Assembly: GCA_950097015.1 (NCBI GenBank)
Contig: CATNEN010000025.1
Location: 2,356,001-2,420,000, forward strand
Source of the DNA: Macrostomum hystrix
Lineage: Eukaryota; Animalia; Platyhelminthes
Length of the DNA stretch: 64,000 nucleotides
Reading direction: 5' to 3'
Position numbers and translations under genes: made by a program. Below the pieces are notes generated by a model, which was not told the origin of the DNA, did not search any database, and saw only the letters and a list, made by a program, of their open reading frames with translations. Below are positions 5,588-64,000 of the stretch, piece after piece; position 1 is the stretch's first letter, and each line of letters starts with the position of its first letter.

Positions 5588-8500
5588 ATGTCTGAAAGAA
5601 TTCAATCACACCTGGAGGTGAAAACTGGTATCCTGGTGAAGCGGTCCCAGAACAAGAGACTATTCACTAGGGAGAATTTCAAAGAAAGATATTTCGTTTT
5701 AACTTCTATGAGCTTGCAATATTTTGAGCGCTCAAAGGCGGTTAGTAGTTTTTTACTTTTCAGATTGATTCTAATAAAAAACTTGGATTCCATTGTTGTA
5801 TGCTTGGATTCATTAGTTTTTTACTATACTATGTGTCTCATGTCATCTATGTTTATCCAGGGCACACCGATTCGAAACACAAAACCGCGCGGTCGCATTT
5901 TTCTGGCTCTGATGAAGGCGGTGGAGAGTGTTGAAAAACTCGATACCGGCTTTGGCGGCGGTCGCTGGCGCTTTGGACTTCAGATAGTGTAGGATTATAT
6001 GTTTCCCTGAAATTCTGTTCTTTTGACATGCTTTCTGCTCTCCCCTGATTCTCCAGTGTTCTCCTCCCCTGATTCTTCAGTGTCCTCCTCCCCTGATTCT
6101 TCAGTGTCCTCCTCCCCTGATTCTTCAGTGTCCTCCTCCCCTGATTCTTCAGTGTCCTCCTCCCCTGATTCTTTAGTGTTCTCCTCCTCTGATTCTTCAG
6201 TGTCCTTCCCTGATTCTTCAGTGTCCTCCTCCCCTGATTCTTCAGTGTCCTCCTCCCCTAATTCTTCAGTGTCCTCCTCCCCTGATTCTTCAGTGTCCTC
6301 CTCCCCTGATTCTTCAGTGTCCTCCTCCCCTAATTCTTCACTGTCCTTCTCCCCTGATTCTTCAGTGTCCTCCTCCCCTGATTCTTCAGTGTCCTCCTCC
6401 CCTGATTCTTCAGTGTCCTCCTCCCCTGATTCTTCAGTGTCCTCCTCCCCTGATTCTTCAGTGTCCTCCTCCCCTGATTCTTCAGTGTCCTCCTCCCCTG
6501 ATTCTTCAGTGTCCTCCTCCCCTGATTCTTCAGTGTCCTCCTCCCCTGATTCTTCAGTGTTCTCCTCCTCTGATTCTTCAGTGTCCTTCCCTGATTCTTC
6601 AGTGTCCTCCCCTGATTCTTCAGTGTCCTCCTCCCCTGATTCTTCAGTGTCCTCCTCCCCTGATTCTTCAGTGTCCTCCTCCCCTGATTCTTCAGTGTTC
6701 TCCTCCTCTGATTCTTCAGTGTCCTCCTCCCCTAATTCTTCAGTGTCCTCCTCCCCTAATTCTTCAGTGTTCTCCTCCCCTAATTCTTCAGTGTTCTCCT
6801 CCTCTGATTCTTCAGTGTCCTCCTCCCCTGATTCTTCAGTGTCCACCTCCCCTAATTCTTCAGTGTTCTCCTCCCCTGATTCCTCAGTGTCCTCCTCCCC
6901 TGATTCTTCAGTGTCCTCCTCCCCTGATTCTTCAGTGTCCTCCTCCCCTGATTCTTTAGTGTCCTCCTCCCCTGATTCTTCAGTGTCCTCCTCCCCTGAT
7001 TCTTTCATGTTCTTTTCTTTTCTGTGTCACCTCTGATTAATCAGATCGAAAATTTCATGTACCCTGAATCTGCAGTACCTTATGTTATAAGTGTTTTACC
7101 TCAATTTTGGACATTTTGGGCAAGTACCTAACTTGCAATGTTTATTAAATACTGCTAGTTTACCTTACACCAGATTTTTTAATAAATATACTAACACCCG
7201 CAGCTATGTAGAAGACGTTCACTTCACGCACTACACTCTGTACGCGCTGGCGTCGACTGAAGCGGAGCGCGCTGATTGGCTGAGACAGATACGAGACTGC
7301 GCCCTGGTCAGAGGGGCCAGATTTGGCGCCCCCTATCATCCAGGGGCCTGGCTCAAACCCGGCCGATTCGCCTGCTGCAACAACAGCGATAGGAAATCCC
7401 TCGGCTGCGCGCCTGCAACAGAGTGGCAGCAGCAGCAGCAACAGGATCCAATCCAATTAGCTGTTCAGCGACAGCAGGGATTGCAGCAGCAGTTGCCGCC
7501 ACAGGCTATGCCCATGCAACAGTCGCATGGCCCACAGCAAACTGGGGTGGGTGTCAAGAATGTGGGATTAATGTCCTGTTTTCTAGCAATATTTATTAAG
7601 TTATGTGATTTTCTACACGAAAATCTCGAATTATTTTATTCTCAAAGTTCCATTATCCCAGAATCCGAACTTCCTTTGTCCTAGACCCCTGATTTCCATT
7701 GTCCCAGATCCTCGAGCTCTATTTTTCTAGATCCCCGAGTTACATTATCCCAGATCCCCGAGTTACATTATCCCAGATCCCCGAGTTATATTATCCCAGA
7801 TCCCCGAGGTACATTATCCCAGGTCCCCGAGTTACATTATCCCAGATCCCCGAGTTACATTATCCCAGATCCCCGAGGTACATTATCCCAGATCCCCGAG
7901 TTACATTATCCCAGATCCCAGAGTTACATTATCCCAGATCCCCGAGTTACCAGATCCCAGATCCGAGAGTATCGCAGATTATCCCAGATTATCTAACACC
8001 CCCGATTTCAATTATCCCATATCCGGAGTTCCATTATCCCAGATCCTTGCGTTCCTTTGTACCACATCCTCGCGCTACATTTTGCCAGATCCGCTATTTC
8101 CATTTTCCTAGATCTCAGAGTTCCATTATCCCACATCCTCGAGTTCTATTATCCCAGAATCCTATTGTTCATAGCTGTCCCGAACCGGTTTGCAGATTGG
8201 TCAGTCTCGTTCAACATCAAACTTTATTGAGTCCGTGGCAACGACCGCGACTGTAACAAACGGAGGCGCCGGACTGCCAGTTGATTCATCCGGAGCAGGC
8301 GATGCGCCAGGCAATGTTGTGGTGGCTATTTACAACTTCAGGCCGATGCGATCCAATCAGATTAGATTGGAAAAGGTATGTTTGTTTTAAAGTGACGATA
8401 GTGGCGCCAAAATCAGTGCTAAGTTACAGTGGCACAAAATGCGCACTTTGGCTGGCGCATGCTTTATCTTGTTAAAATGAAGAATTAATTTAGAATAAAA

Positions 8501-38999: not shown

Positions 39000-39764
39000 T
39001 CAATTAAAAGGTGACACGCACTCGCTCATCGCCCCGTCGAAGCCCTCATATCTGCGGTCGCCATCCACCATTCTCTCAAAGTCACTCCCGGCCAGGGTGA
39101 CGCACTCGGTGCCGCCATAGTTATTTGGTTCACCGGCGGACCAGGGACCGGTGAAGCTGGTGTTGCAGCCGATCCACGTCCAGCCTACCGAGGCATTCAT
39201 GCCGTTTGACAGACGAAGACCACCCAGCAGCACACGCCTGATCTGCCTGGAGTCAAACAGTCCCTTCAGGTGGGCCATCTCTGTGTTGTCAATCACATCG
39301 GCCATGATGACGAGGCCGGGCTCCGCGTCCATCGCAAATCGGAAGGCATCCCAGTCCGTCGACTTGTTGTGGAACTTGTACTTGGTGCCGCACAGGTCGT
39401 CAGCGTAGCCAGCGGGACACAGAGCTCCGGGCGGCAGTCGGGACTGCTGCTTTACGAACACTCGACCAGTTCGGTTGCAGCTGCAGTCCCTCACGTACTT
39501 GCTGCACCTGTCGAACACGAACAGCTTGCATGGACCGTCGGCAGTGGAGAACGCCTGACATCGCTGCCTCAGGCTGCACTGACTGGCGCACGCCACATTC
39601 GTTAGAGCCTCAGCGTGGGTCTCGGTGAAGGCGCTCATCATGCACAGCGGGCCGTAGATGCTGTTGTAGAAACTAACTGATGTCGCTTGCGACAACGACT
39701 GGGCATTTGCCATCAGAAACAGGTGCCAAAGCAAAGCGACTTTTAAAGTCCTCAGGTTCTGCAT
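39000..39764 (-). CDS. Secreted PAN/apple-like + C-type lectin domain protein, paralogue 1
   Basis: Intronless 254 aa: signal peptide, Cys-rich CASQCSLRQRCQAF..C..C module, then a CTLD-like fold with LGG, W-W and the EPN motif (GEPNN..ECV). Confidence 0.85.
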   Translation of the reverse strand: MQNLRTLKVALLWHLFLMANAQSLSQATSVSFYNSIYGPLCMMSAFTETHAEALTNVACASQCSLRQRCQAFSTADGPCKLFVFDRCSKYVRDCSCNRTGRVFVKQQSRLPPGALCPAGYADDLCGTKYKFHNKSTDWDAFRFAMDAEPGLVIMADVIDNTEMAHLKGLFDSRQIRRVLLGGLRLSNGMNASVGWTWIGCNTSFTGPWSAGEPNNYGGTECVTLAGSDFERMVDGDRRYEGFDGAMSECVSPFN

Positions 39765-40364
39765 GCTTACTCTGAATGTATTTCGTGGTTCAGAGTTCTG
39801 CTCAAATACATCAACCTATGTTCTACTGGCTGCTATATGGCCCTTGTCCTGCGTCCGAAAAAAATTTTACATTGTGTTGCTTTTTTAAAGAACTTAAGTC
39901 CTCAAGCACTCATTATCGTACGCTCGTACTTCAACTCTTCTCTTTCTTGCACAGCCAATAATAGGCATACCGGCTGCGTTAAATCTAGCAAAAACCTGTT
40001 GGAGTTCTCTAAAGCATGTTCTGAGTGGCGTTAAGTTTGCAACTGTTGGCCCGCCTAATTGTTAAGGCAGTTGGTGAGACTAGCAACTTTTTATAGGCAT
40101 GGGCCATGTCATTCTTAAAGCACCAGTATAGGCTGCCATTAATTTTGGAAAAGGACTGAACGATTCTAACTAACAATTGAAGATGCTTCTGTCAGTTTTT
40201 TTGAGCAGTTCAGCCTCGCTTTCTTAATTGGATAGACGACCTTGAAGCGAGAACTGAAACGTTCTGGCTGTCCCTAAGCACGCACGCAGGAACGAACTCA
40301 GGTCAAAGTAATTTCCGTACTTTGAAATTGAAACAAGATCGCAAAATGAAACGCCGACAAAAAC

Positions 40365-40850
40365 AATGTTCTTTGCCCCGCTCTGCCAAGCATCGAGGCC
40401 CAGCGAGTTGTCGATGTTCTAATCAGACAGGTGGTTCTTCGAGATGGCGTTCCGGATTCGATTCACAGCGACCAAGGCCATCAGTTTGAGAGCCAGCTGT
40501 CTCAGTCACTGTGCGAGCAGCTCGGCATGCAGAAAAGCCGGACGTCACCCATCCACCCCAGCGGCAACGGTCTGGTGGAGCGTTGCTACCGAAATCTGCT
40601 GCAGGCCTCACAGATGGAACGCAGCGAGAGAGAGACACTCGGTTCCAACGGTACGAAAAAGTGACCTGGTGATGCTGAACAGCAAGGTGGTGGAGCCTGG
40701 CAAATCAAAGAGCCTTAGAAACCGCTGGATAGGGCCGTACATCGTTCTCAAGAGGCTCGGCGAAGTCAACTATCGAGTACGCCTGGCCCCGGGCCCAGAC
40801 GTGCGGAAGAGGCGCAAACAGGCACCATGACCGCCTCAAACGTGGAGCGG
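40365..40850 (+). mobile_element. Ty3/gypsy LTR retrotransposon integrase fragment, internally deleted
   Basis: GVPDSIHSDQGHQFES..LC..LG..KSRTSPIHPSGNGLVER (rve core), then, after a deletion or frameshift, KSLRNRWIGPYIVLKRLGEVNYRV (GPY/F motif). Confidence 0.9.
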
Positions 40851-41406
40851 CAAAATTCCTTACTGCCTAGCGACAATCCTCAGGCAGCTCAAACCGAGAC
40901 AACCGCTACTAATAGCGGCCTGAAATATCTTTTCGTAACTCAAGTCACGCTGGCATTTCACTGTATTCAAGGGAAAGCTATCATTGCATACGTTTGATAC
41001 TTTCGTATTCAAAGCTGTGTCAGCTTATATCACTCAAAGAATCGACAAATTTCCAATTCTTAAGACTACGAGCGCTCGTAAATGAAATCAATTTTTTTTC
41101 AGTTGGTAGTTACGCTCGTATATAGTCTACTTTTACTATCGCTATTTTATTCAAAGAAAACATATTTGCGACGTGCAGCTAAGCGCTTTAGGCGATTCGT
41201 GTTGTACTACTTATTTGTAACTCAAGTAGCATTCTAAAATAGCCGAAAGTTTCATTGACATGCAGCTAAGTAAGGAAGACTTTGAATTCAGATAATCAAA
41301 CTATGTATTCAGAGCAGAAAAAGTCTGTAAACCTAATATAATCTGCTAGAGTTCCTAAGCAGAAGCACCGTTGGAAGCTGAGAGACATTGTTGTACTGTC
41401 GCAATT

Positions 41407-42138
41407 ATGAAGCCATTCTGCGCATTGCTATTTGCCACATTGCTCGCTCAGGCATCTTCCGATGCACAAACGTTTAACGAAATCAACGGACTCTTGTGCA
41501 TTAAGAGTGAATTCACTGAAACGCATTCAGATGTACTTAGGAATGTGGCGTGCGCCAGTCAGTGCAGCCTGAGGCAGCGCTGTCAGGCATTCTCCACGGC
41601 CGACGGTCCATGCAAGCTGTTCGTGTTCGACAGGTGCAGCAAGTACGTGAGGGACTGCAGCTGCAACCGAACTGGTCGAGTGTTCGTAAAGCAGCAGTCC
41701 CGACTGCCGCCCGGAGCTCTGTGCCCCGCTGGCTACGCTGACGACCTGTGCGGCACAAAGTACAAGTTTTTCAATGGCATCACTAGCTGGGACGAATTCA
41801 AGAAAGCAGTCAGCGCGGAGCCCGGCCTCGTTATCATGGCTGACATAACTGATTCGAACGAGCTGGACCACGCCAGGTACATAATGAACGGTCGGAACGT
41901 GATTTTCCTTGGTGGTCGCCAGCAGCCGCTCAGTCCTGAGCCATCTGGCGGCTGGTTCTGGGCCAGCTGCAACACGAGCATTGACGGCAGCTTGTGGTAC
42001 ACTGGCGAGCCAAACAACGGGGGAAGCACCGAGTGCGTGACCCTTCTGAGCAGGTTCCACACGGCCATTAGCGATGGTGATGTGTCTTGGAATGGAATGT
42101 CTGGCGGCCTTGCCAAGTGTCTGGCACCATTCAGCTGA
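41407..42138 (+). CDS. Secreted PAN/apple-like + C-type lectin domain protein, paralogue 2 (inverted)
   Basis: ATG at 41407 (MKPFCALLFATLLAQASS signal peptide), 243 aa, same core, GEPNNGGSTECV. Confidence 0.85.
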   Translation: MKPFCALLFATLLAQASSDAQTFNEINGLLCIKSEFTETHSDVLRNVACASQCSLRQRCQAFSTADGPCKLFVFDRCSKYVRDCSCNRTGRVFVKQQSRLPPGALCPAGYADDLCGTKYKFFNGITSWDEFKKAVSAEPGLVIMADITDSNELDHARYIMNGRNVIFLGGRQQPLSPEPSGGWFWASCNTSIDGSLWYTGEPNNGGSTECVTLLSRFHTAISDGDVSWNGMSGGLAKCLAPFS

Positions 42139-42922
42139 GTCGATGGATTAAAATCTAATGATGAAAAACTTTCCATGCTTTGAAATGAACTTTTGAATTT
42201 ACTTTTCTATCCTTCGTATTGGTTGCTCCAAGATTTGCTCGTATATAAAAACATTACAACAAAAAGCAGAAACAGTAAACGAACTGCGAGTCTAAAAAGG
42301 TCTACAAAAATCGAAAGAGGGAAAAATACGAGTCTATTTGGCTCTATGCTGATTCGCTCATTGCTGAAAGCCCGGCTCTAAAAGTGAAAATTGTCAAAAT
42401 GTTTCGTCTCGTCAAAATAGTTTCCTTAAGCTTCCATTAAGATCCGGTGCTGAAAGAGCTAACAAAGTTTCGTGCTGTCTATGACATGTCCTAGCAATGT
42501 CTGGGCAAACTTTTTTAAAGGCAAACATTGCTGTTAATCCAGCTTGACAGGAAAGCTACTGATTGATGGCTTGGCGAGTGCTAACAAAGACGCTTTCCCG
42601 CACTTCCGACATTAGAAAACTTGGAATACTGAATTCGTCTGTATAATGACTCCAACTCTCGTATCATGGACCATAAGTTCAAATTCTCAGTTGGCTACAT
42701 TAGTTTAGGGTGCAATTAACCAAACACCAATTTTTGTAGCCGAAGCTGCTCTTAAACTGTCGCATTAACTTTTGAGTATGAACTGTCTTAATTATTTGCC
42801 AATTTAAACTCAAATCACATATTCAACAAAAGCAGAGCTGGCTTTTGCAACACTTGTGAAAATCAATAAAAACGACTTTCAGCACAAAATTCATCTTCAA
42901 CACCTCCAAAGTAGCTGATAGT

Positions 42923-43688
42923 TTAGCCGAATGGCGACACGCACTCGCAGTAGCCGCCAGCTGTGAAGTTATAGATTTCAGTGGGAACATCGATAAATTT
43001 TCCTTTGTTGTCGATACCAGCTCGGTCCTCTTTTCCAGCGATTGCGCTGTTACCATTGTTGGGCTCGCCGCTGCCCCACAGGCTGCCAGAGATGTTCAGA
43101 CGGCAGCTGGCCAACTGCCAGCCTCCCGATGGCTCCTGACTGCCCCGAAGCTGCCAACCGCCAACGTAAATTGAGTAGTAGCCAGACATGCTTGACAACT
43201 TGCTGTCAACCAGCTGTCCCACTCTGACCAGCTCGGTGCTGTCCATCACGTCAGCCATGATGACGAGTCCTGACTCCGCATCGCACATTTCCTTGCACTT
43301 TGTCCAGTTTCCCACACAGCTCATGAACTTGTACTTGGTGCCGCACAGGTCTTCAGCGTAGCCAGCAGGACACAGAGCTCCGGGCGGCAGTCCCGACTGC
43401 TGTCTCACAAACACCTGAGCTGTGCGAGTGCAGCTGCAGTCTCTCACGTTCTTGCTGCACCTGTGGAACACGAACAGCTTACACGGACCATCGGATATGC
43501 TGAATGCCTGACAATGCTGCCTAATGCTGCACAGACTGGCACATCTCATTTGTGAATTGGTGTCGGAGTGGGTCTCAACGAATACTTTCTGCACAGTAGT
43601 CCGCTGATGCTTTGGTAGGTGATGGCAATGGTTTTACGGAAACCAGCATTGCCAGAGCGTTGATCGTCCAAATCCAGCCTATTTTCAT
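42923..43688 (-). pseudogene. PAN/apple-like + C-type lectin paralogue 3, with a frameshift near 43585
   Basis: ATG at 43688 gives MKIGWIWTINALAMLVSVKTIAITYQSISGLLCRK. The homologous VFVETHSD..CASLCSIRQHCQAF..GEPNN..YCECVSPFG continues in the -1 frame, while the ATG frame stops about 12 codons later. Confidence 0.75.
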
Positions 43689-44296
43689 AGCAACAATGTT
43701 TTGTTTCGATACCCTAAGTCAGTGCTTTAAGTCAGTCAATTCTACAGATCAAACCTCTTCATTGAAAAGTGTGCCAGATTACCTTATAAGTTCGATTGGC
43801 ACACATTTTCTTCTGAATCTCTCTCAACACACAGGTACAGTTATCATTTTATCACGAAAAATCAGGCAAGCCGTGCCAGAAGTTTCCTGTCTGCCTGTTC
43901 ATTTTGTTTGTTGTGGAGCTTGCGACTCTATCGTTAAAACCCCCGCATTTTTAAGTCAACCATTTTCTTGGGCTAAAAATTCTGCGAACTATCATTTCAA
44001 TCTAAGCCTTCTAAGCCTCTGTGTGTTCTATTTTAATGCATTTAAACCACTGTGGCAAGCACTCACAAGACACACATAAGATGCTAAGCTTAATTTATTT
44101 CAAGTAGAGTACGCAACAGTATGGGCTAAGATAAATTTAGAGGCCTTATTTAAATAGTTTCGGATATTCAAATCATATAAATATTTTATTTACCAATTCT
44201 CCTCTGACAAAGGAGTAAACAAACTAATATAATTTTTTGTAGATGCGTACTTCAAAATTGACCCTATTTTCGATCGTCTCGTTAGTCCTTAGAAAC

Positions 44297-45031
44297 TCAG
44301 TGAAACGGTGACACGCACTCGCTCATGGCGCCGTCCATGCCTGACCAGATGCGGTCACCATCGATGAGAGCCGTGTACAAGCTGCCGGCCACCGTGACGC
44401 ACTCGGTGCCGTGACTGTTGTTCGGTTCACCGGTGGACCAAGGACCGGTGAAGCTGGTGTTGCAGCCGATCCACACCCAGTTCTCAGCGGGACTCGTGCC
44501 GTTCGACAGTCGAAGACCTCCAAGAAACACTCGATCTCTGCTCCTGGCGTTAAACAGTCCCTTCAGATGGGCCATCTCTGTGTTGTCAATCACATCGGCC
44601 ATGATGACGAGGCCGGGCTCCGCGTCTATCTCAAATCGGAAGGCATCCCAGTCCGTCGACTTGTTGTGGAACTTGTACTTGGTGCCGCACAGGTCGTCAG
44701 CGTAGCCAGCGGGACACAGAGCTCCGGGCGGCAGTCGGGACTGCTGCTTTACGAACACTCGACCAGTTCGGTTGCAGCTGCAGTCCCTCACGTACTTGCT
44801 GCACCTGTCGAACACAAACAGCTTGCATGGACCGTCGGCAGTGGAGAACGCCTGACAGCGCTGCCTCAGGCTGCACTGACTGGCGCACTCTACGCTGGAT
44901 TGAGCAGATGGATAGATCTCAATAAATCGGCTACTTACGCACTGCAAACCGTTGATTTGGGTGTATTGCAAACTAGAGGAAACGACAGTGGCAAATGCCG
45001 CGGTTAGCCAGAGGCTGAAAAACATCCTCAT
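44297..45031 (-). CDS. Secreted PAN/apple-like + C-type lectin domain protein, paralogue 4
   Basis: 244 aa with signal MRMFFSLWLTAAFATVVSS, a core nearly identical to paralogue 1, and GEPNNSHGTECV. Confidence 0.85.
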   Translation of the reverse strand: MRMFFSLWLTAAFATVVSSSLQYTQINGLQCVSSRFIEIYPSAQSSVECASQCSLRQRCQAFSTADGPCKLFVFDRCSKYVRDCSCNRTGRVFVKQQSRLPPGALCPAGYADDLCGTKYKFHNKSTDWDAFRFEIDAEPGLVIMADVIDNTEMAHLKGLFNARSRDRVFLGGLRLSNGTSPAENWVWIGCNTSFTGPWSTGEPNNSHGTECVTVAGSLYTALIDGDRIWSGMDGAMSECVSPFH

Positions 45032-45284
45032 TTTGGCAAATGGTTTGGAATATGCGGCTCTGAAACAGTCAACCGTTTATATTGACATTCTTTCTGCCCA
45101 TTTGCTATTTGTATGCATAGCATTTAACGCTGCATGGGGGCCAATAATTTAGATGACAGTCAGGTGTTGGATGTTTCGCTTCTGTGGCAACTTGCATTCA
45201 TAATCTATTGAAACATCAGTGTGAGGAGTTTAATGCGAGCAAAAGTTTTAATGTGTAGGCAAATATCAGGACTGTTTGACAGGA

Positions 45285-46212: not shown

Positions 46213-46557
46213 ATGTCGCTCATTTTGGTGCTAGCACTGCTGTTACTGGCTGACGCGGCTGTTTCAGCAGTGCCGAGGCCAACGGAAACAGTCGCCTGCA
46301 GGGCGGAATACTCCGGCAAATCTGGTTCGCCAGCAATGATCGTTCAAAATCTTCTGATTCCGCGACAGATTCCAAGGGCTCCGCGCCGCTGCCAATGTCG
46401 GGCGGGCAGCTCGGTAGAATGTGAGCTCAATAACTTACCGCAAGTATACGCAATCATCGACTCAATAGAACCAAGCAACTCATACTGGCTAGTGAAGGCT
46501 GACGATGATCACAAGCTGTTTCACCTTGAAAATTGTGCAGCATATGCTAAATCCTAA
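46213..46557 (+). CDS. Small secreted Cys-containing protein of unknown function
   Basis: 114-aa ATG-initiated ORF in AT-rich surroundings with a clear hydrophobic signal peptide (MSLILVLALLLLADAAVSA) and five Cys. Confidence 0.65.
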   Translation: MSLILVLALLLLADAAVSAVPRPTETVACRAEYSGKSGSPAMIVQNLLIPRQIPRAPRRCQCRAGSSVECELNNLPQVYAIIDSIEPSNSYWLVKADDDHKLFHLENCAAYAKS

Positions 46558-53257: not shown

Positions 53258-54588
53258 ATGTCCTTAATCAATCACGCCTATCACGACGATCGCGTTGATC
53301 AAGACGGTGTCGGTGTCGGCGGGCTGCTGTTCGCGGCTGTGGCCCGCGGCACCACAATCTTGGCCAAGCAGGCCATGGCAGCTGGCAATTTTGTTGAAGT
53401 GACAGAGCAAGTGCTGGCCCGCATCACGCCGGAGAATGCCAAGATGAGCCTGTCGCAAGGATCCTACATGTTGCACTACGCATCGGAGGACCGTCTGGTG
53501 TACTTTTGCGTAACGCCGGACTCTTTTGAAAGATCGCGCGCTTTCCTATTTCTGGCTGATGTTAAGCAGAGATTTGTGCAACGCTACGGTAGGCGAGCGC
53601 TGACCGCTCTACCGTACGCAATGAATTCTGAGTTTGCCCACACCCTAGCCCAGCTAATGACGAGGTACTCGTCATTGGGTGCTACTGCTGCTACTGATCC
53701 CGTCAGTGTTGGCATCGGCGCCGCGGAAGCCTACAGCCAGCGTCAACAGTCGACGGAGCGCACGGAACAGATGGATCGGGTCAGACAGCAGGTCAACGAA
53801 CTGCAGGGCATCATGGTCAGAAATGTCGGTGAGTGCTTGATGATTTCATTATTGATTGCTCTTCATATGCCTGCGAACTTTAGGCTAGTTCATTTCCGAA
53901 TCCACCTTGCACTTCAGGCTAGTTCATTTCCTATAAACTTCAGGCTAGTTCATTTCCTATAAACTTCAGGCTAGTTCATTTCCAAATCCCCCCGCACTTC
54001 AGGCTAGTTCATTTCCAAATCCCCCCGCACTTCAGGCTAGTTCATTTCCGAATCCACCTTGCACTTCAGGCTAGTTCATTTCCGAATCCACCTTTCACTT
54101 CAGGCTAGTTCATTTCCTATAAACTTCAGGCTAGTTCATTTCCTATAAACTTCAGGCTAGTTCATTTCCTATAAACTTCAGGCTAGTTCATTTCCTATAA
54201 ACTTCAGGCTAGTTCATTTCCAAATCCCCCCGCACTTCAGGCTAGTTCATTTCCAAATCCACCTTGCACTTCAGGCTAGTTCATTTCCTATAAACTTCAG
54301 GCTACTTCGTTTCCGAATCCCCTGAACTTTAGGCCATTTCATTTCCGAATCACTGCAGACTCGCTGATCACCCGAGGCGAGCGTATCGAGCTGCTAGTGG
54401 ACAAGGCGGACGAGTTAGCCGGCAGTTCGATTCAGTTCAGCAGCGCCAGCCGTCGGGTGGCTCGGCGATATTGGTGGCGGAATGCCAAGGTCACTGTGGC
54501 GCTGGTTGTGGCCGCAATTCTGGTCCTGTACTTTATTGTGTCAGCTGCCTGCGGCGGCCTCGACTGGCCCTGCACCAGGAAGAAGTAG
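53258..54588 (+). CDS. VAMP7: VAMP7/TI-VAMP, longin R-SNARE
   Basis: Exons 53258-53828 and 54359-54588: longin domain (LLFAAVARGTTILAK..RAFLFL..ALPYAMNSEF), SNARE motif (VNELQGIMVRNVDSLITRGERIELLVDK) and a C-terminal TM helix. Confidence 0.95.
53875..54345. repeat. Minisatellite, 26-34 bp units (cttcaggctagttcatttcc...), filling the VAMP7 intron
   Basis: Tandem copies with a variable tail. Confidence 0.92.
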
Positions 54589-61659: not shown

Positions 61660-64000
61660 AGTATTATCACGTGTATCTTATCTTTTATCACTGTAATCAC
61701 GTGTCTCTTATCTTTTATCACTATAATCACGTGTCTCTTATCTTTTATCACTATAATCACGTGTATCTTATCTTTTATCACTATAATCACGTGTATCTTA
61801 TCTTTTATCACTATAATCACGTGTCTCTTATCTTTTATCACTATAATCACGTGTCTCTTATATTTTATCACTATAATCACGTGTCTCTTATCTTTTATCA
61901 CTATAATCACGTGTATCTTATCTTTTATCACTATAATCACGTGTCTCTTATCTTTTATCACTATAATCACGTGTCTCTTATCTTTTATCACTATAATCAC
62001 GTGTCTCTTATCTTTTATCACTATAATCACGTGTCTCTTATCTTTTATCACTATAATCACATGTCTCTTATCTTTTATCACTATAATCACGTGTCTCTTA
62101 TCTTTTATCACTATAATCACGTGTCTCTTATCTTTTATCACTATATTCACGTGTCTCTTATCTTTTATCACTATAATCACGTGTCTCTTATCTTTTATCA
62201 CTATAATCACGTGTCTCTTATCTTTTATCACTATAATCACGTGTCTCTTATCTTTTATCACTATAATCACGTGTCTCTTATCTTCTATCACTAATATCAC
62301 GTGTCTCTTATCTTTTATCACTATAATCACGTGTCTCTTATCTTTTATCACTATAATCACGTGTCTCTTATCTTTTATCACTATAATCACGTGTCTCTTA
62401 TCTTTTATCACTATAATCACGTGTCTCTTATCTTTTATCACTATAATCACGTGTATCTTATCTTTTATCACTATAATCACGTGTCTCTTATCTTTTATCA
62501 CTATAATCACGTGTCTCTTATCTTTTATCACTATAATCACGTGTCTCTTATCTTTTATCACTATAATCACGTGTCTCTTATCTTTTATCACTATAATCAC
62601 GTGTCTCTTATCTTTTATCACTATAATCACGTGTCTCTTATCTTTTATCACTATAATCACGTGTCTCTTATCTTTTATCACTATAATCACGTGTCTCTTA
62701 TCTTTTATCACTATAATCACGTGTCTCTTATCTTTTATCACTATATTCACGTGTCTCTTATCTTTTATCACTATATTCACGTGTCTCTTATCTTTTATCA
62801 CTATAATCAAGTTTCTCTTACCTTTTATCACTATAATCACGTGTCTCTTATCTTTTATCACTATAATCACGTGTCTCTTATCTTTTATCACTATAATCAC
62901 GTGTCTCTTATCTTTTATCACTATAATCACGTGTCTCTTATCTTTTATCACTATAATCACGTGTCTCTTATCTTTTATCACTATAATCACGTGTCTCTTA
63001 TCTTTTATCACTATATTCACGTGTCTCTTATCTTTTATCACTATAATCACGTGTCTCTTATCTTTTATCACTATAATCACGTGTCTCTTATCTTTTATCA
63101 CTATAATCACGTGTCTCTTATCTTTTATCACTATATTCACGTGTCTCTTATATTTTATCACTATAATCACGTGTCTCTTATCTTTTATCACTATAATCAC
63201 GTGTCTCTTATCTTTTATCACTATAATCACGTGTCTCTTATCTTTTATCACTATATTCACGTGTCTCTTATCTTTTATCACTATAATCACGTGTCTCTTA
63301 TCTTTTATCACTATAATCACGTGTCTCTTATCTTTTATCACTATATTCACGTGTCTCTTATCTTTTATCACTATAATCACGTGTCTCTTATCTTTTATCA
63401 CTATAATCACGTGTCTCTTATCTTTTATCACTATAATCACGTGTCTCTTATCTTTTATCACTATAATCACGTGTATCTTATCTTTTATCACTATAATCAC
63501 GTGTCTCTTATCTTTTATCACTATAATCACGTGTCTCTTATCTTTTATCACTATAATCACGTGTCTCTTATCTTTTATCACTATATTCACGTGTCTCTTA
63601 TCTTTTATCACTATAATCACGTGTCTCTTATCTTTTATCACTATAATCACGTGTCTCTTATCTTTTATCACTATAATCACGTGTCTCTTATCTTTTATCA
63701 CTATAATCACGTGTCTCTTATCTTTTATCACTATAATCACGTGTCTCTTATCTTTTATCACTATATTCACGTGTCTCTTATATTTTATCACTATAATCAC
63801 GTGTCTCTTATCTTTTATCACTATAATCACGTGTCTCTTATCTTTTATCACTATAATCACGTGTCTCTTATCTTTTATCACTATAATCACGTGTCTCTTA
63901 TCTTTTATCACTATAATCACGTGTCTCTTATCTTTTATCACTATAATCACGTGTCTCTTATCTTTTATCACTATAATCACGTGTCTCTTATCTTTTATCA
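61660..64000. repeat. Minisatellite, 30 bp unit (atcacgtgtctcttatcttttatcactata), running off the window end
   Basis: At least about 78 near-identical copies; source of the spurious 791-aa ORF. Confidence 0.97.

What the first reader, a model, noticed from the sequence alone, without database searches (positions are those of the whole stretch)
39000..45031. PAN/C-type lectin cluster with homogenised cores and variable binding loops: candidate diversifying recognition system
Seen: four intronless secreted paralogues in 6 kb. Paralogues 1 and 4 differ at only about 5 of about 335 nt (39255-39590 vs 44552-44888). Paralogue 2 shares about 225 nt of this tract (41543-41768) and then diverges abruptly at KYKF. 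Tract ends differ between pairs: 1 and 2 share NVAC while 4 has SVEC, but 1 and 4 share through AHLKGLF. Signal and N-terminal regions barely align. In the 1-vs-4 CTLD, changes are mostly amino-acid-altering and cluster around LGG/EPN and the region after ECV (DSRQIRR/NARSRDR, MNASVG/TSPAEN, NYGG/NSHG, SDFERMV/SLYTALI). Established: EPN marks mannose/GlcNAc-type Ca2+ sites, and these loops set specificity. Inference: segmental gene conversion keeps a constant PAN scaffold while ligand loops diversify, loosely analogous to FREPs or Sp185/333. I do not know this architecture as a described flatworm family.
Basis: partly seen in the sequence, partly recalled or inferred. Interest (0 to 1): 0.8.

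Follow-up and report, generated by a model that had tools for sequence, protein, structure and literature searches.

The report
Flatworm lectin genes sharing copied cores
Four neighbouring genes (three intact, one broken) for small secreted PAN-plus-C-type-lectin proteins of a Macrostomum-type flatworm are old, very diverged copies. A 230-430-base middle stretch has recently been copied from gene to gene, a real but well-precedented case of gene conversion and not a shown diversity-generating immune system.

Summary
P1 (39000-39764, -) and P4 (44297-45031, -) differ at 5 of 337 nt (39255-39591 vs 44552-44888). P2 (41407-42138, +) shares 228 nt of that tract and diverges abruptly after KYKF. 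Everything around the tracts, including the signal peptides and the non-coding flanks, is saturated.

Synonymous divergence is 0.04-0.13 inside the tracts and 0.6 to over 2 outside (Fisher p 1e-7 to 1e-11). That points to gene conversion between old paralogues, not to selection alone. Contigs from other runs cross the tract edges of P4 and the whole of P2, so an assembly artefact is unlikely.

P3 has a frameshifted N-terminus. Its own tract matches paralogues 0.33-0.5 Mb away.

The genes belong to a family of at least 150 intronless members. A PAN/apple fold plus a CTLD fold is confirmed by structure prediction, although Pfam is silent. The same mosaic recurs across the family. The closest public relatives are uncharacterised Macrostomum lignano proteins.

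Diversifying selection is not shown: omega is 0.49 in the loops and below 1 everywhere. The Asn of the WND motif is missing in the window's genes. No evidence supports a FREP- or Sp185/333-like mechanism.

This scan had already reported the same phenomenon on other DNA of this genome.

The parts
39000..39764 (-). P1: intact intronless gene, 254 aa. Hydrophobic signal peptide, PAN/apple module (about aa 30-110), linker, C-type lectin-like domain (about aa 116-254) with EPN.
   Evidence: ORF. AF2 model pLDDT 93.7. CTLD fold TM 0.73-0.80 to langerin and codakine. PAN fold Z 7.6-5.3.
39255..39591 (-). Conversion tract shared by P1 and P4: 337 nt with 5 differences.
   Evidence: dS is 0.04 here, 0.62 downstream and over 2 upstream. 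Fisher p=7.6e-8.
39373..39600 (-). Part of the tract that is also shared with P2: 228 nt with 5 differences.
   Evidence: Genome-wide, only P1, P2 and P4 carry this stretch at 98-100% identity; the next best copy is 85-89%.
41407..42138 (+). P2: intact gene, 243 aa from the ATG (the ORF is open from 41371). It is inverted relative to P1, P3 and P4.
   Evidence: A 1171-nt contig of run X2 spans the whole gene and both flanks.
41541..41768 (+). P2 copy of the homogenised tract. It ends abruptly after KYKF.
   Evidence: dS is 0.13 here and about 1.8 in the rest of the gene. At 41589 and 41598 the allele in run X2 carries the P1/P4 base.
42923..43690 (-). P3: probable pseudogene of a different subfamily. 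The ORF 42923-43594 lacks the signal peptide and the first conserved Cys, which lie upstream in other reading frames.
   Evidence: Three-frame translation. Alignment to its nearest paralogues. A 2-bp indel polymorphism at 43481 in run X2.
43061..43495 (-). P3 tract that is about 99% identical to paralogues at C25:1.90 Mb (L033, L034). The sub-part 43232-43495 also matches L027 and L031 at 2.73 and 1.90 Mb.
   Evidence: Difference maps, coordinates, and the highest k-mer depth of the stretch in run X1.
44297..45031 (-). P4: intact gene, 244 aa. It is the only one of the four covered, gene body only, by contigs of runs from a separate 2020 study, so it looks transcribed.
   Evidence: Contigs of X4 and X8 lie on 44246-45035 only, with 0-1 differences.
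44552..44888 (-). P4 copy of the homogenised tract.
   Evidence: Both edges are crossed by independent contigs: X4 at 44261-44827 and 44798-45032, X8 at 44454-44827 and 44836-45035.

Best explanation
The cluster holds three intact genes and one decayed gene of a large, intronless family restricted to Macrostomum-type flatworms. There are at least 150 copies in this 220-Mb genome. Each gene encodes a secreted protein of about 250 aa made of a PAN/apple module packed against a C-type lectin-like domain.

The copies are ancient duplicates. Signal peptides, the first third of PAN, the C-terminal part of the CTLD and all non-coding flanks are saturated with change.

The most conserved protein segment is the rest of PAN, the linker and the first CTLD strands. 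It keeps enough DNA identity to serve as substrate for non-allelic (ectopic) gene conversion. Recent events copied 230-340 nt among P1, P2 and P4, and about 260-430 nt between P3 and paralogues 0.33-0.5 Mb away. This reset synonymous and non-synonymous divergence alike. The tracts stop where divergence becomes too high. The same region serves as the breakpoint for occasional whole-module chimeras.

Shown: the mosaic, the synonymous-site contrast, the folds, the family size, and recombinants elsewhere in the family.

Inferred: the mechanism (conversion seeded by homology and limited by mismatches), and the function. I take these to be soluble glycan- or ligand-binding proteins forming a germline-encoded repertoire. 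Immune or microbial recognition is the most likely role, perhaps 45%; a reproductive, mucus or digestive role is not excluded.
For: Synonymous-site contrast:
- dS is 0.04-0.13 in the tracts and 0.6 to over 2 outside, with Fisher p from 7.6e-8 to 3.4e-11.
- At identical amino acids, codons are identical in 0.91 of cases in the core and 0.46 in the CTLD for P1/P2. In six disjoint pairs of a C3/C39 group the figures are 0.96 and 0.57.
- ML omega of the core (0.28) is about that of the CTLD scaffold (0.30), while the core's tree is 3-5 times shorter. Divergence was reset as a whole, not merely kept down by selection on the protein.

Tract geometry:
- Tract ends differ between pairs.
- The 98-100% tract occurs only in the three neighbours.

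Recombination elsewhere in the family:
- L005 follows L020 upstream (78:0) and L006 downstream (6:132).
- L055 shows 63:0 upstream and 1:76 downstream.
- Both breakpoints lie inside the core. Many further pairs have cores 93-100% identical beside CTLDs 55-80% identical.

Against an artefact: contigs from other runs cross the tract edges.

Protein identity:
- Folds. Profile hits: codakine 5e-6, Eimeria MIC5 PAN 3.4e-4.
- Family size and intact ORFs; signal peptides.
- Named relatives are all M. lignano 'Apple domain-containing' or 'C-type lectin domain-containing' proteins, with the core conserved across species.
Against: - Within the window trio the core tree and the CTLD tree agree. The case there rests on rate contrast, not on topology.
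- Only contigs, not raw long reads, could be laid, and no single independent contig spans a whole tract of P1 or P4.
- The core's synonymous divergence is also reduced between clades on different contigs (identical-codon fraction 0.73 against 0.48). That needs either rare long-range conversion or some extra constraint such as codon bias; GC3 is 0.76-0.85 in the core.
- Function is entirely inferred. Pfam does not recognise either domain, and one canonical Ca2+/sugar ligand is missing.
Confidence: 0.8

Rival explanations
1. The genes are recent duplicates. What is unusual is accelerated, possibly targeted, divergence of the N-terminal module and the CTLD, including synonymous sites. This would be a hypermutation or cassette-replacement type of diversifying system, with the core simply showing the true young age.
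For: The P1/P4 differences in the CTLD fall in dense patches where nearly every base differs, next to identical stretches. The patches lie around the EPN loop and the beta3-beta4 region. The family also varies EPN, QPD and EPS.
Against: - Non-coding flanks on both sides are unalignable right up to the coding sequence.
- There is no strand- or base-specific spectrum: 28 transitions, 41 transversions, all codon positions affected.
- Tract partners and tract ends differ from gene to gene, and P3's partners lie 0.3-0.5 Mb away.
- Some pairs show the reverse pattern, with the CTLD 97% identical and the core 93% (L057/L063).
- Omega stays below 1.
Confidence: 0.07
2. The identical tracts are an assembly or polishing artefact, produced by paralogous reads homogenising or collapsing the copies.
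For: Short-read contigs of the probable source sample (X1) break inside the tracts, and k-mer depth rises there 4- to 14-fold. So short reads alone cannot phase the copies.
Against: - Contigs of runs from a different study (X4, X8) reproduce P4 with 0-1 differences across both tract edges.
- An X2 contig spans all of P2 with its flanks.
- Each copy carries private differences inside the tract.
- Tracts of 230-430 nt are far shorter than long reads.
- The same pattern is seen in dozens of loci.
Confidence: 0.04
3. The core is kept identical by selection on the nucleotide sequence itself: an RNA structure, a small-RNA target or a regulatory element inside the coding region.
For: Synonymous divergence of the core is reduced even between clades. 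Long antisense ORFs run across the cores. A transcript-like contig may run antisense over P2.
Against: - The core RNA folds no better than shuffles (z=0.07), and there is no Rfam match.
- Cores differ between clades (median pS 0.48), so no single sequence is required.
- Identity extends to different lengths in different pairs.
Confidence: 0.04
4. This is a programmed or somatic diversification system as in snail FREPs or sea-urchin Sp185/333: chimeric transcripts or somatic conversion generate individual repertoires.
For: The germline has mosaic constant and variable parts. A lectin-type binding domain is present and the family is large.
Against: Nothing in the data shows more variants than genes. 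Transcript-like contigs of P4 match the genome with 0-1 differences. No immune context is known.
Confidence: 0.04

Closest known systems
Uncharacterised Macrostomum lignano proteins (UniProt A0A1I8HTM9, A0A1I8H311, A0A267EP21, A0A267EAK8; automatic names 'C-type lectin domain-containing' or 'Apple domain-containing')
   Same: Same two-domain architecture and same length of about 250-270 aa. Same conserved core motif block. These are the best hits of the family profile, with E from 1e-90 to 1e-15.
   Different: Only 23-40% identical to P1. They come from another species. Nothing has been published on their function or evolution that I could find.
Region-limited ectopic gene conversion and concerted evolution in tandem multigene families (general knowledge: MHC and KIR genes, plant NLR clusters, Plasmodium var and trypanosome VSG segmental conversion)
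   Same: Short tracts of near identity sit inside old paralogues. Tract ends vary. Homogenisation is stronger between close neighbours. Occasional chimeras arise.
   Different: Here the homogenised part is always the same central segment of an intronless gene of about 750 nt. It recurs through at least 150 genes, including groups megabases apart or on different contigs.
Conotoxin superfamilies (general knowledge: conserved signal region, hypervariable mature toxin, low synonymous change in the conserved part)
   Same: A constant/variable layout within one small secreted protein, with synonymous conservation of the constant part.
   Different: In this family the signal peptide is the most variable part and the constant part is internal. 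Positive selection, which is strong in conotoxins, is not detected here.
Biomphalaria FREPs and sea-urchin Sp185/333
   Same: Secreted lectin-type or recognition proteins in large, clustered, mosaic families.
   Different: The defining features of those systems are transcript or somatic diversity exceeding the gene number and immune induction. These are untested or unsupported here, and the domains are different (PAN plus CTLD, not IgSF plus fibrinogen).
Invertebrate CTLD expansions (general knowledge: C. elegans clec genes, mosquito CTLs; solved examples codakine, mosGCTL-1 and mosGCTL-6)
   Same: Soluble single-CTLD proteins with EPN or QPD motifs, greatly expanded in one lineage.
   Different: An N-terminal PAN/apple module is fused and packed onto the CTLD. 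Most members lack the canonical beta3 Cys and the Asn of WND. Pfam Lectin_C does not detect them.

Membership tests
C-type lectin-like domain (CTLD) superfamily | The CTLD fold: two helices, two sheets and a long loop region. | tested here: met
   AF2 pLDDT 93.7. Foldseek E from 1e-6, TM by target 0.73-0.80 to langerin, codakine and snake-venom lectins.
C-type lectin-like domain (CTLD) superfamily | Significant sequence match to CTLD profiles. | tested here: inconclusive
   Pfam Lectin_C gives no hit even at E<=1. The 53-sequence family profile against the PDB gives codakine 5e-6 and mosGCTL-1 3.6e-5. UniProt names the M. lignano homologues as C-type lectin domain-containing.
Ca2+-dependent mannose-type C-type lectins (EPN class) | The full Ca2+ site 2 ligand set: EPN, then Glu at +8, then Asn-Asp of WND. 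| tested here: not met
   E212-P-N214, E220 and D234 are present in P1, P2 and P4. The Asn position (233) is V, S and I respectively. P3 aligns differently there, with D at 233 and V at 234. Family-wide, Asn is found in only 19 of 71 members. The tripeptide is EPN in about 47, QPD in about 13 and EPS in about 8.
Ca2+-dependent mannose-type C-type lectins (EPN class) | Measured Ca2+-dependent sugar binding. | not testable with these tools
   Needs recombinant protein and a glycan array.
PAN/apple domain | The PAN fold: a central helix packed on an antiparallel sheet, cross-linked by disulfides. | tested here: met
   N-domain model pLDDT 88.9. The top eight VIA hits are all PAN/apple modules, Z 7.6-5.3 (plant SRK PAN, leech antiplatelet protein, plasminogen, HGF N domain, MANEC). 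Foldseek hits are weak but of the same kind.
PAN/apple domain | Sequence match to PAN profiles. | tested here: inconclusive
   Pfam PAN_1 scores 10.8 bits against a cut-off of 21.4, for P4 only. The family profile against Eimeria MIC5 PAN gives E=3.4e-4. One M. lignano homologue is named 'Apple domain-containing'.
Interlocus (ectopic) gene conversion | A tract with near-zero synonymous divergence inside paralogues that are otherwise anciently diverged. | tested here: met
Interlocus (ectopic) gene conversion | Tract ends differ between pairs, and phylogenies of the segments are incongruent. | tested here: met
   Different ends. Incongruence is shown for L005, L055, L054 and L057. It is not seen among the window trio itself.
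Interlocus (ectopic) gene conversion | Not an assembly artefact; the event is visible in independent data. | tested here: inconclusive
   Independent contigs cross the edges of P4 and span P2. In X2, two P2-specific sites carry the P1/P4 base. Only contigs were available, not raw long reads.
FREP / Sp185/333-type diversifying recognition systems | Positive selection or hypervariability focused on the binding surface. | tested here: not met
   The loops evolve fastest (tree length 80 against 46 for the scaffold), but omega is 0.49 by ML and at most 0.97 in pooled pairs.
FREP / Sp185/333-type diversifying recognition systems | More transcript or somatic variants than germline genes; induction by immune challenge. 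| not testable with these tools
   Only one read-laying run was allowed and only contigs were served.
Diversity-generating retroelement-like mutagenesis of a CTLD | Adenine-specific differences against a template repeat, with a nearby reverse transcriptase. | tested here: not met
   The spectrum is unbiased. The only retroelement piece nearby is an integrase remnant at 40444-40830.

The most novel reading that the evidence does not exclude
The invariant core is more than a passive target of conversion. It would work as a built-in 'homology handle' that lets a family of at least 150 genes keep exchanging its two variable ends, the N-terminal PAN part and the CTLD ligand loops, across clusters and chromosomes. 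That would make a germline combinatorial repertoire of secreted recognition proteins, maintained by selection in a flatworm that has no known adaptive system. The two recent N/C chimeras with breakpoints inside the core (L005, L055), the EPN/QPD/EPS switching, and the reduced synonymous divergence of the core even between clades all fit this reading. None of them proves it.
Probability: 0.2. Interest if true: 0.6.

Novelty: new member of a known kind. Interest (0 to 1): 0.36.

Why it matters
The finding documents a very large secreted PAN-CTLD family, restricted to one lineage, in a model flatworm genus used for work on regeneration and sexual selection. It gives a clean, quantifiable example of hierarchical concerted evolution confined to one segment of a small intronless gene.

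Practical consequences:
- Gene trees, orthology calls and dN/dS scans of this family, and of other lectin-like families in this genome, will mislead unless the core is analysed separately.
- Short-read expression or variant calls will cross-map in the cores.

If the family proves to be a recognition repertoire, it would be a starting point for flatworm innate immunity or gamete and seminal-fluid interaction studies. That is not shown here.

Tried and rejected
- Pfam on the four proteins gave nothing significant. The domain calls therefore rest on profile-to-PDB searches and folds.
- The word-based protein search found a single relative. The exhaustive profile search was needed to find the M. 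lignano homologues.
- Foldseek on the N-domain alone gave only weak hits. VIA-align settled it.
- RNA-structure and Rfam checks of the core were negative.
- A DGR-like adenine bias was looked for and not found.
- Elevated GC3 in the core (0.76-0.85 against 0.55-0.70 elsewhere) fits biased conversion or codon bias, but decides nothing.
- A 'joint' in run X1 (44335 to 39040) looked like a P4/P1 recombinant. It is most simply an effect of my cutting the laid stretch at 39040, because the two 3' ends are 82% alike. I did not count it.
- An 18-letter loose end at 41134 in X2 looked like a possible splice. It is only a diverged allele of the adjacent genomic sequence.
- The first IQ-TREE runs failed for technical reasons; the result is.
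- Site-wise codon tests (PAML, HyPhy), GENECONV and RDP are not installed. I used synonymous-site Fisher tests, triplet informative-site tests and partition-wise ML omega instead.
- Three literature searches found no description of the family.
- The species was not identified beyond 'Macrostomum-type, not M. lignano itself'.

Full report
**1. What is there**

The interval holds four ORFs of one family:
- P1, 39000-39764 (-), 254 aa.
- P2, 41407-42138 (+), 243 aa from the ATG; the ORF is open from 41371.
- P3, 42923-43594 (-).
- P4, 44297-45031 (-), 244 aa.

P1, P2 and P4 start with hydrophobic signal-peptide-like N-termini, as do nearly all relatives.

P3 does not. The stretch that should encode the conserved 'I-x-G-L-L-C' start of the PAN module, and a possible signal peptide, lie upstream in two other reading frames. 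In run X2 the ORF carries a further 2-bp indel at 43481. I read P3 as a pseudogene.

A remnant of an LTR-retrotransposon integrase lies between P1 and P2, at 40444-40830.

**2. The observation**

On a codon alignment, P1 and P4 differ at 5 positions over P1 CDS nt 174-510. This is window 39591-39255 against 44888-44552. P1 and P2 differ at 5 positions over nt 165-392 (P2 41541-41768) and then diverge abruptly.

Upstream of the tract all pairs are about 45% identical. The flanks outside the ORFs are about 30% identical, which is random.

Inside the tract each copy has private changes: P1 at nt 204 and 348; P2 at 213, 222 and 381; P4 at 246, 431, 435 and 495. Most are G/C to A/T, as expected for mutations that arose after homogenisation.

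**3. Conversion or constraint?**

Nei-Gojobori dS:

| Pair | In the tract | Outside the tract |
|---|---|---|
| P1/P4 | 0.04 | 0.62 in the remaining CTLD; over 2 in the N-terminal part |
| P1/P2 | 0.13 | about 1.8 |

- Fisher tests on synonymous sites give 7.6e-8, 3.4e-11 and 2.5e-10.
- I then restricted the count to codons that encode the same degenerate amino acid in both genes. The fraction of identical codons is 0.91 in the core against 0.46 in the CTLD for P1/P2.
- A one-ratio ML codon model on 65 genes gives omega 0.28 for the core and 0.30 for the CTLD scaffold, while the core tree is 3-5 times shorter (14.5 against 46-80 substitutions per codon). The core is therefore short in both dS and dN. 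That is what resetting by conversion predicts, and selection on the protein alone does not.
- The core RNA shows no excess structure (z=0.07), and there is no Rfam hit.
- Tract divergence (1.5-2.2%) is of the order of the difference between the reference and run X2 at this locus (1.4%). The events are therefore recent.

**4. Is it an artefact?**

Only contigs were served.
- Contigs of X4 and X8 come from a separate 2020 study. They lie on 44246-45035 only and match P4 with 0-1 differences. They cross the 3' tract edge (44261-44827, 44454-44827) and the 5' edge (44798-45032, 44836-45035).
- A 1171-nt X2 contig spans all of P2 with both flanks.
- Contigs of X1, the probable source sample, break inside the tracts with raised k-mer depth, as expected for shared words. 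Unique parts sit at an even depth of 72-82.
- In X2, the two sites 41589 and 41598 carry the P1/P4 base. These are two of the three sites where the reference P2 differs from both P1 and P4. This hints that the tract state is polymorphic, although a contig path through a repeat can be chimeric.

**5. The family**

- The window's genome (220 Mb, 42 contigs) holds at least 150 matches: 242 candidates, of which 149 were scored. Nearly all are single uninterrupted ORFs. They sit in tandem clusters on many contigs.
- Among 71 members studied, aa 68-131 are almost invariant.
- Many pairs have cores 93-100% identical in DNA next to CTLDs that are 55-80% identical.
- The core tree and the CTLD tree recover the same clades, but the core collapses within clades.
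- True incongruence exists. L005 follows L020 upstream (78:0 informative sites) and L006 downstream (6:132). L055 follows L054 (63:0) and then L058 (1:76). The breakpoints lie at nt 322-351 and 261-403, inside the core.
- The reverse mosaic also occurs: L057/L063 have CTLDs 97.5% identical and cores 93% identical.
- The 98-100% tract of this window is confined to P1, P2 and P4.
- P3 belongs to another subfamily. It is about 99% identical over 43061-43495 to paralogues 0.5 Mb away, and over 43232-43495 to others 0.33-0.5 Mb away.
- A C3/C39 group spread over megabases has identical codons at 0.96 of core sites against 0.57 in the CTLD. Even between clades the figures are 0.73 against 0.48.

**6. 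What the proteins are**

- Pfam finds nothing significant.
- A 53-member profile matches CTLDs (codakine 5e-6) and the Eimeria MIC5 PAN module (3.4e-4) in the PDB.
- The AF2 model of P1 has pLDDT 93.7 and pTM 0.83, so the two modules appear to pack in a fixed way.
- The C-half superposes on langerin, codakine and similar lectins (TM 0.73-0.80).
- The N-half, folded alone (pLDDT 88.9), hits PAN/apple modules almost exclusively (Z 7.6-5.3).
- The homogenised core covers the PAN helix and its last three strands, the Pro/Gly-rich linker with two Cys, and the first CTLD strands.
- In the CTLD, E212-P-N214, E220 and D234 are kept in P1, P2 and P4. The Asn of 'WND' is V, S and I respectively. In P3 the alignment differs here, with D at 233 and V at 234.
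- Family-wide the tripeptide is EPN (about 47 of 71), QPD (about 13) or EPS (about 8).
- P1, P2 and P4 uniquely lack C145 and C247 and have C221 instead. A canonical mannose site is therefore not established for these genes.

**7. Selection**

For P1/P4, omega in the CTLD remainder is 0.44.

Pooling 18 disjoint close pairs gives this profile of pS along the gene: about 0.5 in the signal peptide, 0.01-0.10 over aa 71-210, and about 0.25 at the C-terminal end. Omega in the loops is 0.7-0.97 and in the strands 0.14-0.45.

ML gives 0.49 for the loops. The loops are the least constrained part, but positive selection is not shown. The difference spectrum is unbiased.

**8. Relatives and literature**

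The exhaustive profile search finds 222 proteins at E<=1e-10. Most are multi-CTLD giants that match only the lectin half. About 20 are two-domain proteins of about 250 aa.

All named ones are uncharacterised Macrostomum lignano proteins, automatically called 'Apple domain-containing' or 'C-type lectin domain-containing'. The closest of them conserves the core block. The genome is therefore a Macrostomum-type flatworm, but not M. lignano itself.

No paper in the held library joins Macrostomum with PAN/apple and lectin families or with gene conversion.

**9. Earlier notes of this scan**

Other windows of the same genome have already been read as region-limited gene conversion in PAN-CTLD, PAN/LamG-like and fibrinogen-type lectin clusters. 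My analysis reaches the same verdict independently for this locus. It adds the family-wide codon tests, the long-range partners of P3, the core-located chimera breakpoints and the fold evidence. The phenomenon is a property of this genome's secreted lectin-like families, not of this locus alone.

**10. Verdict**

Conversion and the domain architecture are supported. The 'diversifying recognition system' is not supported beyond analogy. I class this as a new member of a known kind, of moderate interest.

Noticed in passing
window 40444-40830 (+): Remnant of an LTR-retrotransposon integrase C-terminus between P1 and P2 (Pfam SH3_Tf2-1 6e-8, Integrase_p58_C 6e-7).
   Followed up: partly
window 41134-42267 and 42720-43819 (run X2): The X2 contigs end in letters that, from memory, are the SMART template-switch primer followed by GGG (at 42267 and 43819) and a Nextera adaptor (at 42720). 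X2 may therefore be cDNA and not DNA. If so, P3 is transcribed in sense from about 43819, and a transcript runs antisense across P2 from about 42267. Contigs cannot prove strand or ends.
   Followed up: partly
window 44411-45007 (+), 41527-42060 (-), 39270-39605 (+): Long ORFs (111-198 aa) run antisense across the homogenised cores of P4, P2 and P1. They are probably a by-product of GC3-rich codon usage.
   Followed up: no
P1 aa 145, 221, 247 (window about 39330-39332, 39102-39104, 39024-39026) and the same columns in P2 and P4: The trio P1/P2/P4 has lost the two Cys that most family members have (alpha1 and 'LCEC') and gained a Cys right after E220. This looks like a rewired disulfide that defines the subfamily.
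   Followed up: partly
family-wide, column of P1 aa 212-214: The sugar-specificity tripeptide varies among paralogues: EPN in about 47, QPD in about 13 and EPS in about 8 of 71.
   Followed up: partly
window 53258-53962 (+): An ORF with a clear Longin (regulated-SNARE-like) domain, E=1.6e-21. It is probably an exon of a housekeeping SNARE gene.
   Followed up: no
window 46213-46557 (+): A 114-aa ORF with a signal-peptide-like start and several Cys, with no Pfam match. It may be another small secreted protein next to the cluster.
   Followed up: no
window 6001-8000 and 62001-64000: Strongly strand-skewed stretches that are partly AT-rich (GC skew -0.36 and -0.56; GC 0.30 at the window's end). 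Overlapping long ORFs on both strands at 5995-7036 suggest repeats.
   Followed up: no
L005 (G000:C7:2909469-2913161) and L055 (G000:C3:8233700-8235450): Two recent chimeric family members. The 5' half is 99-100% identical to one paralogue and the CTLD 96% identical to another, with the breakpoint inside the conserved core.
   Followed up: yes
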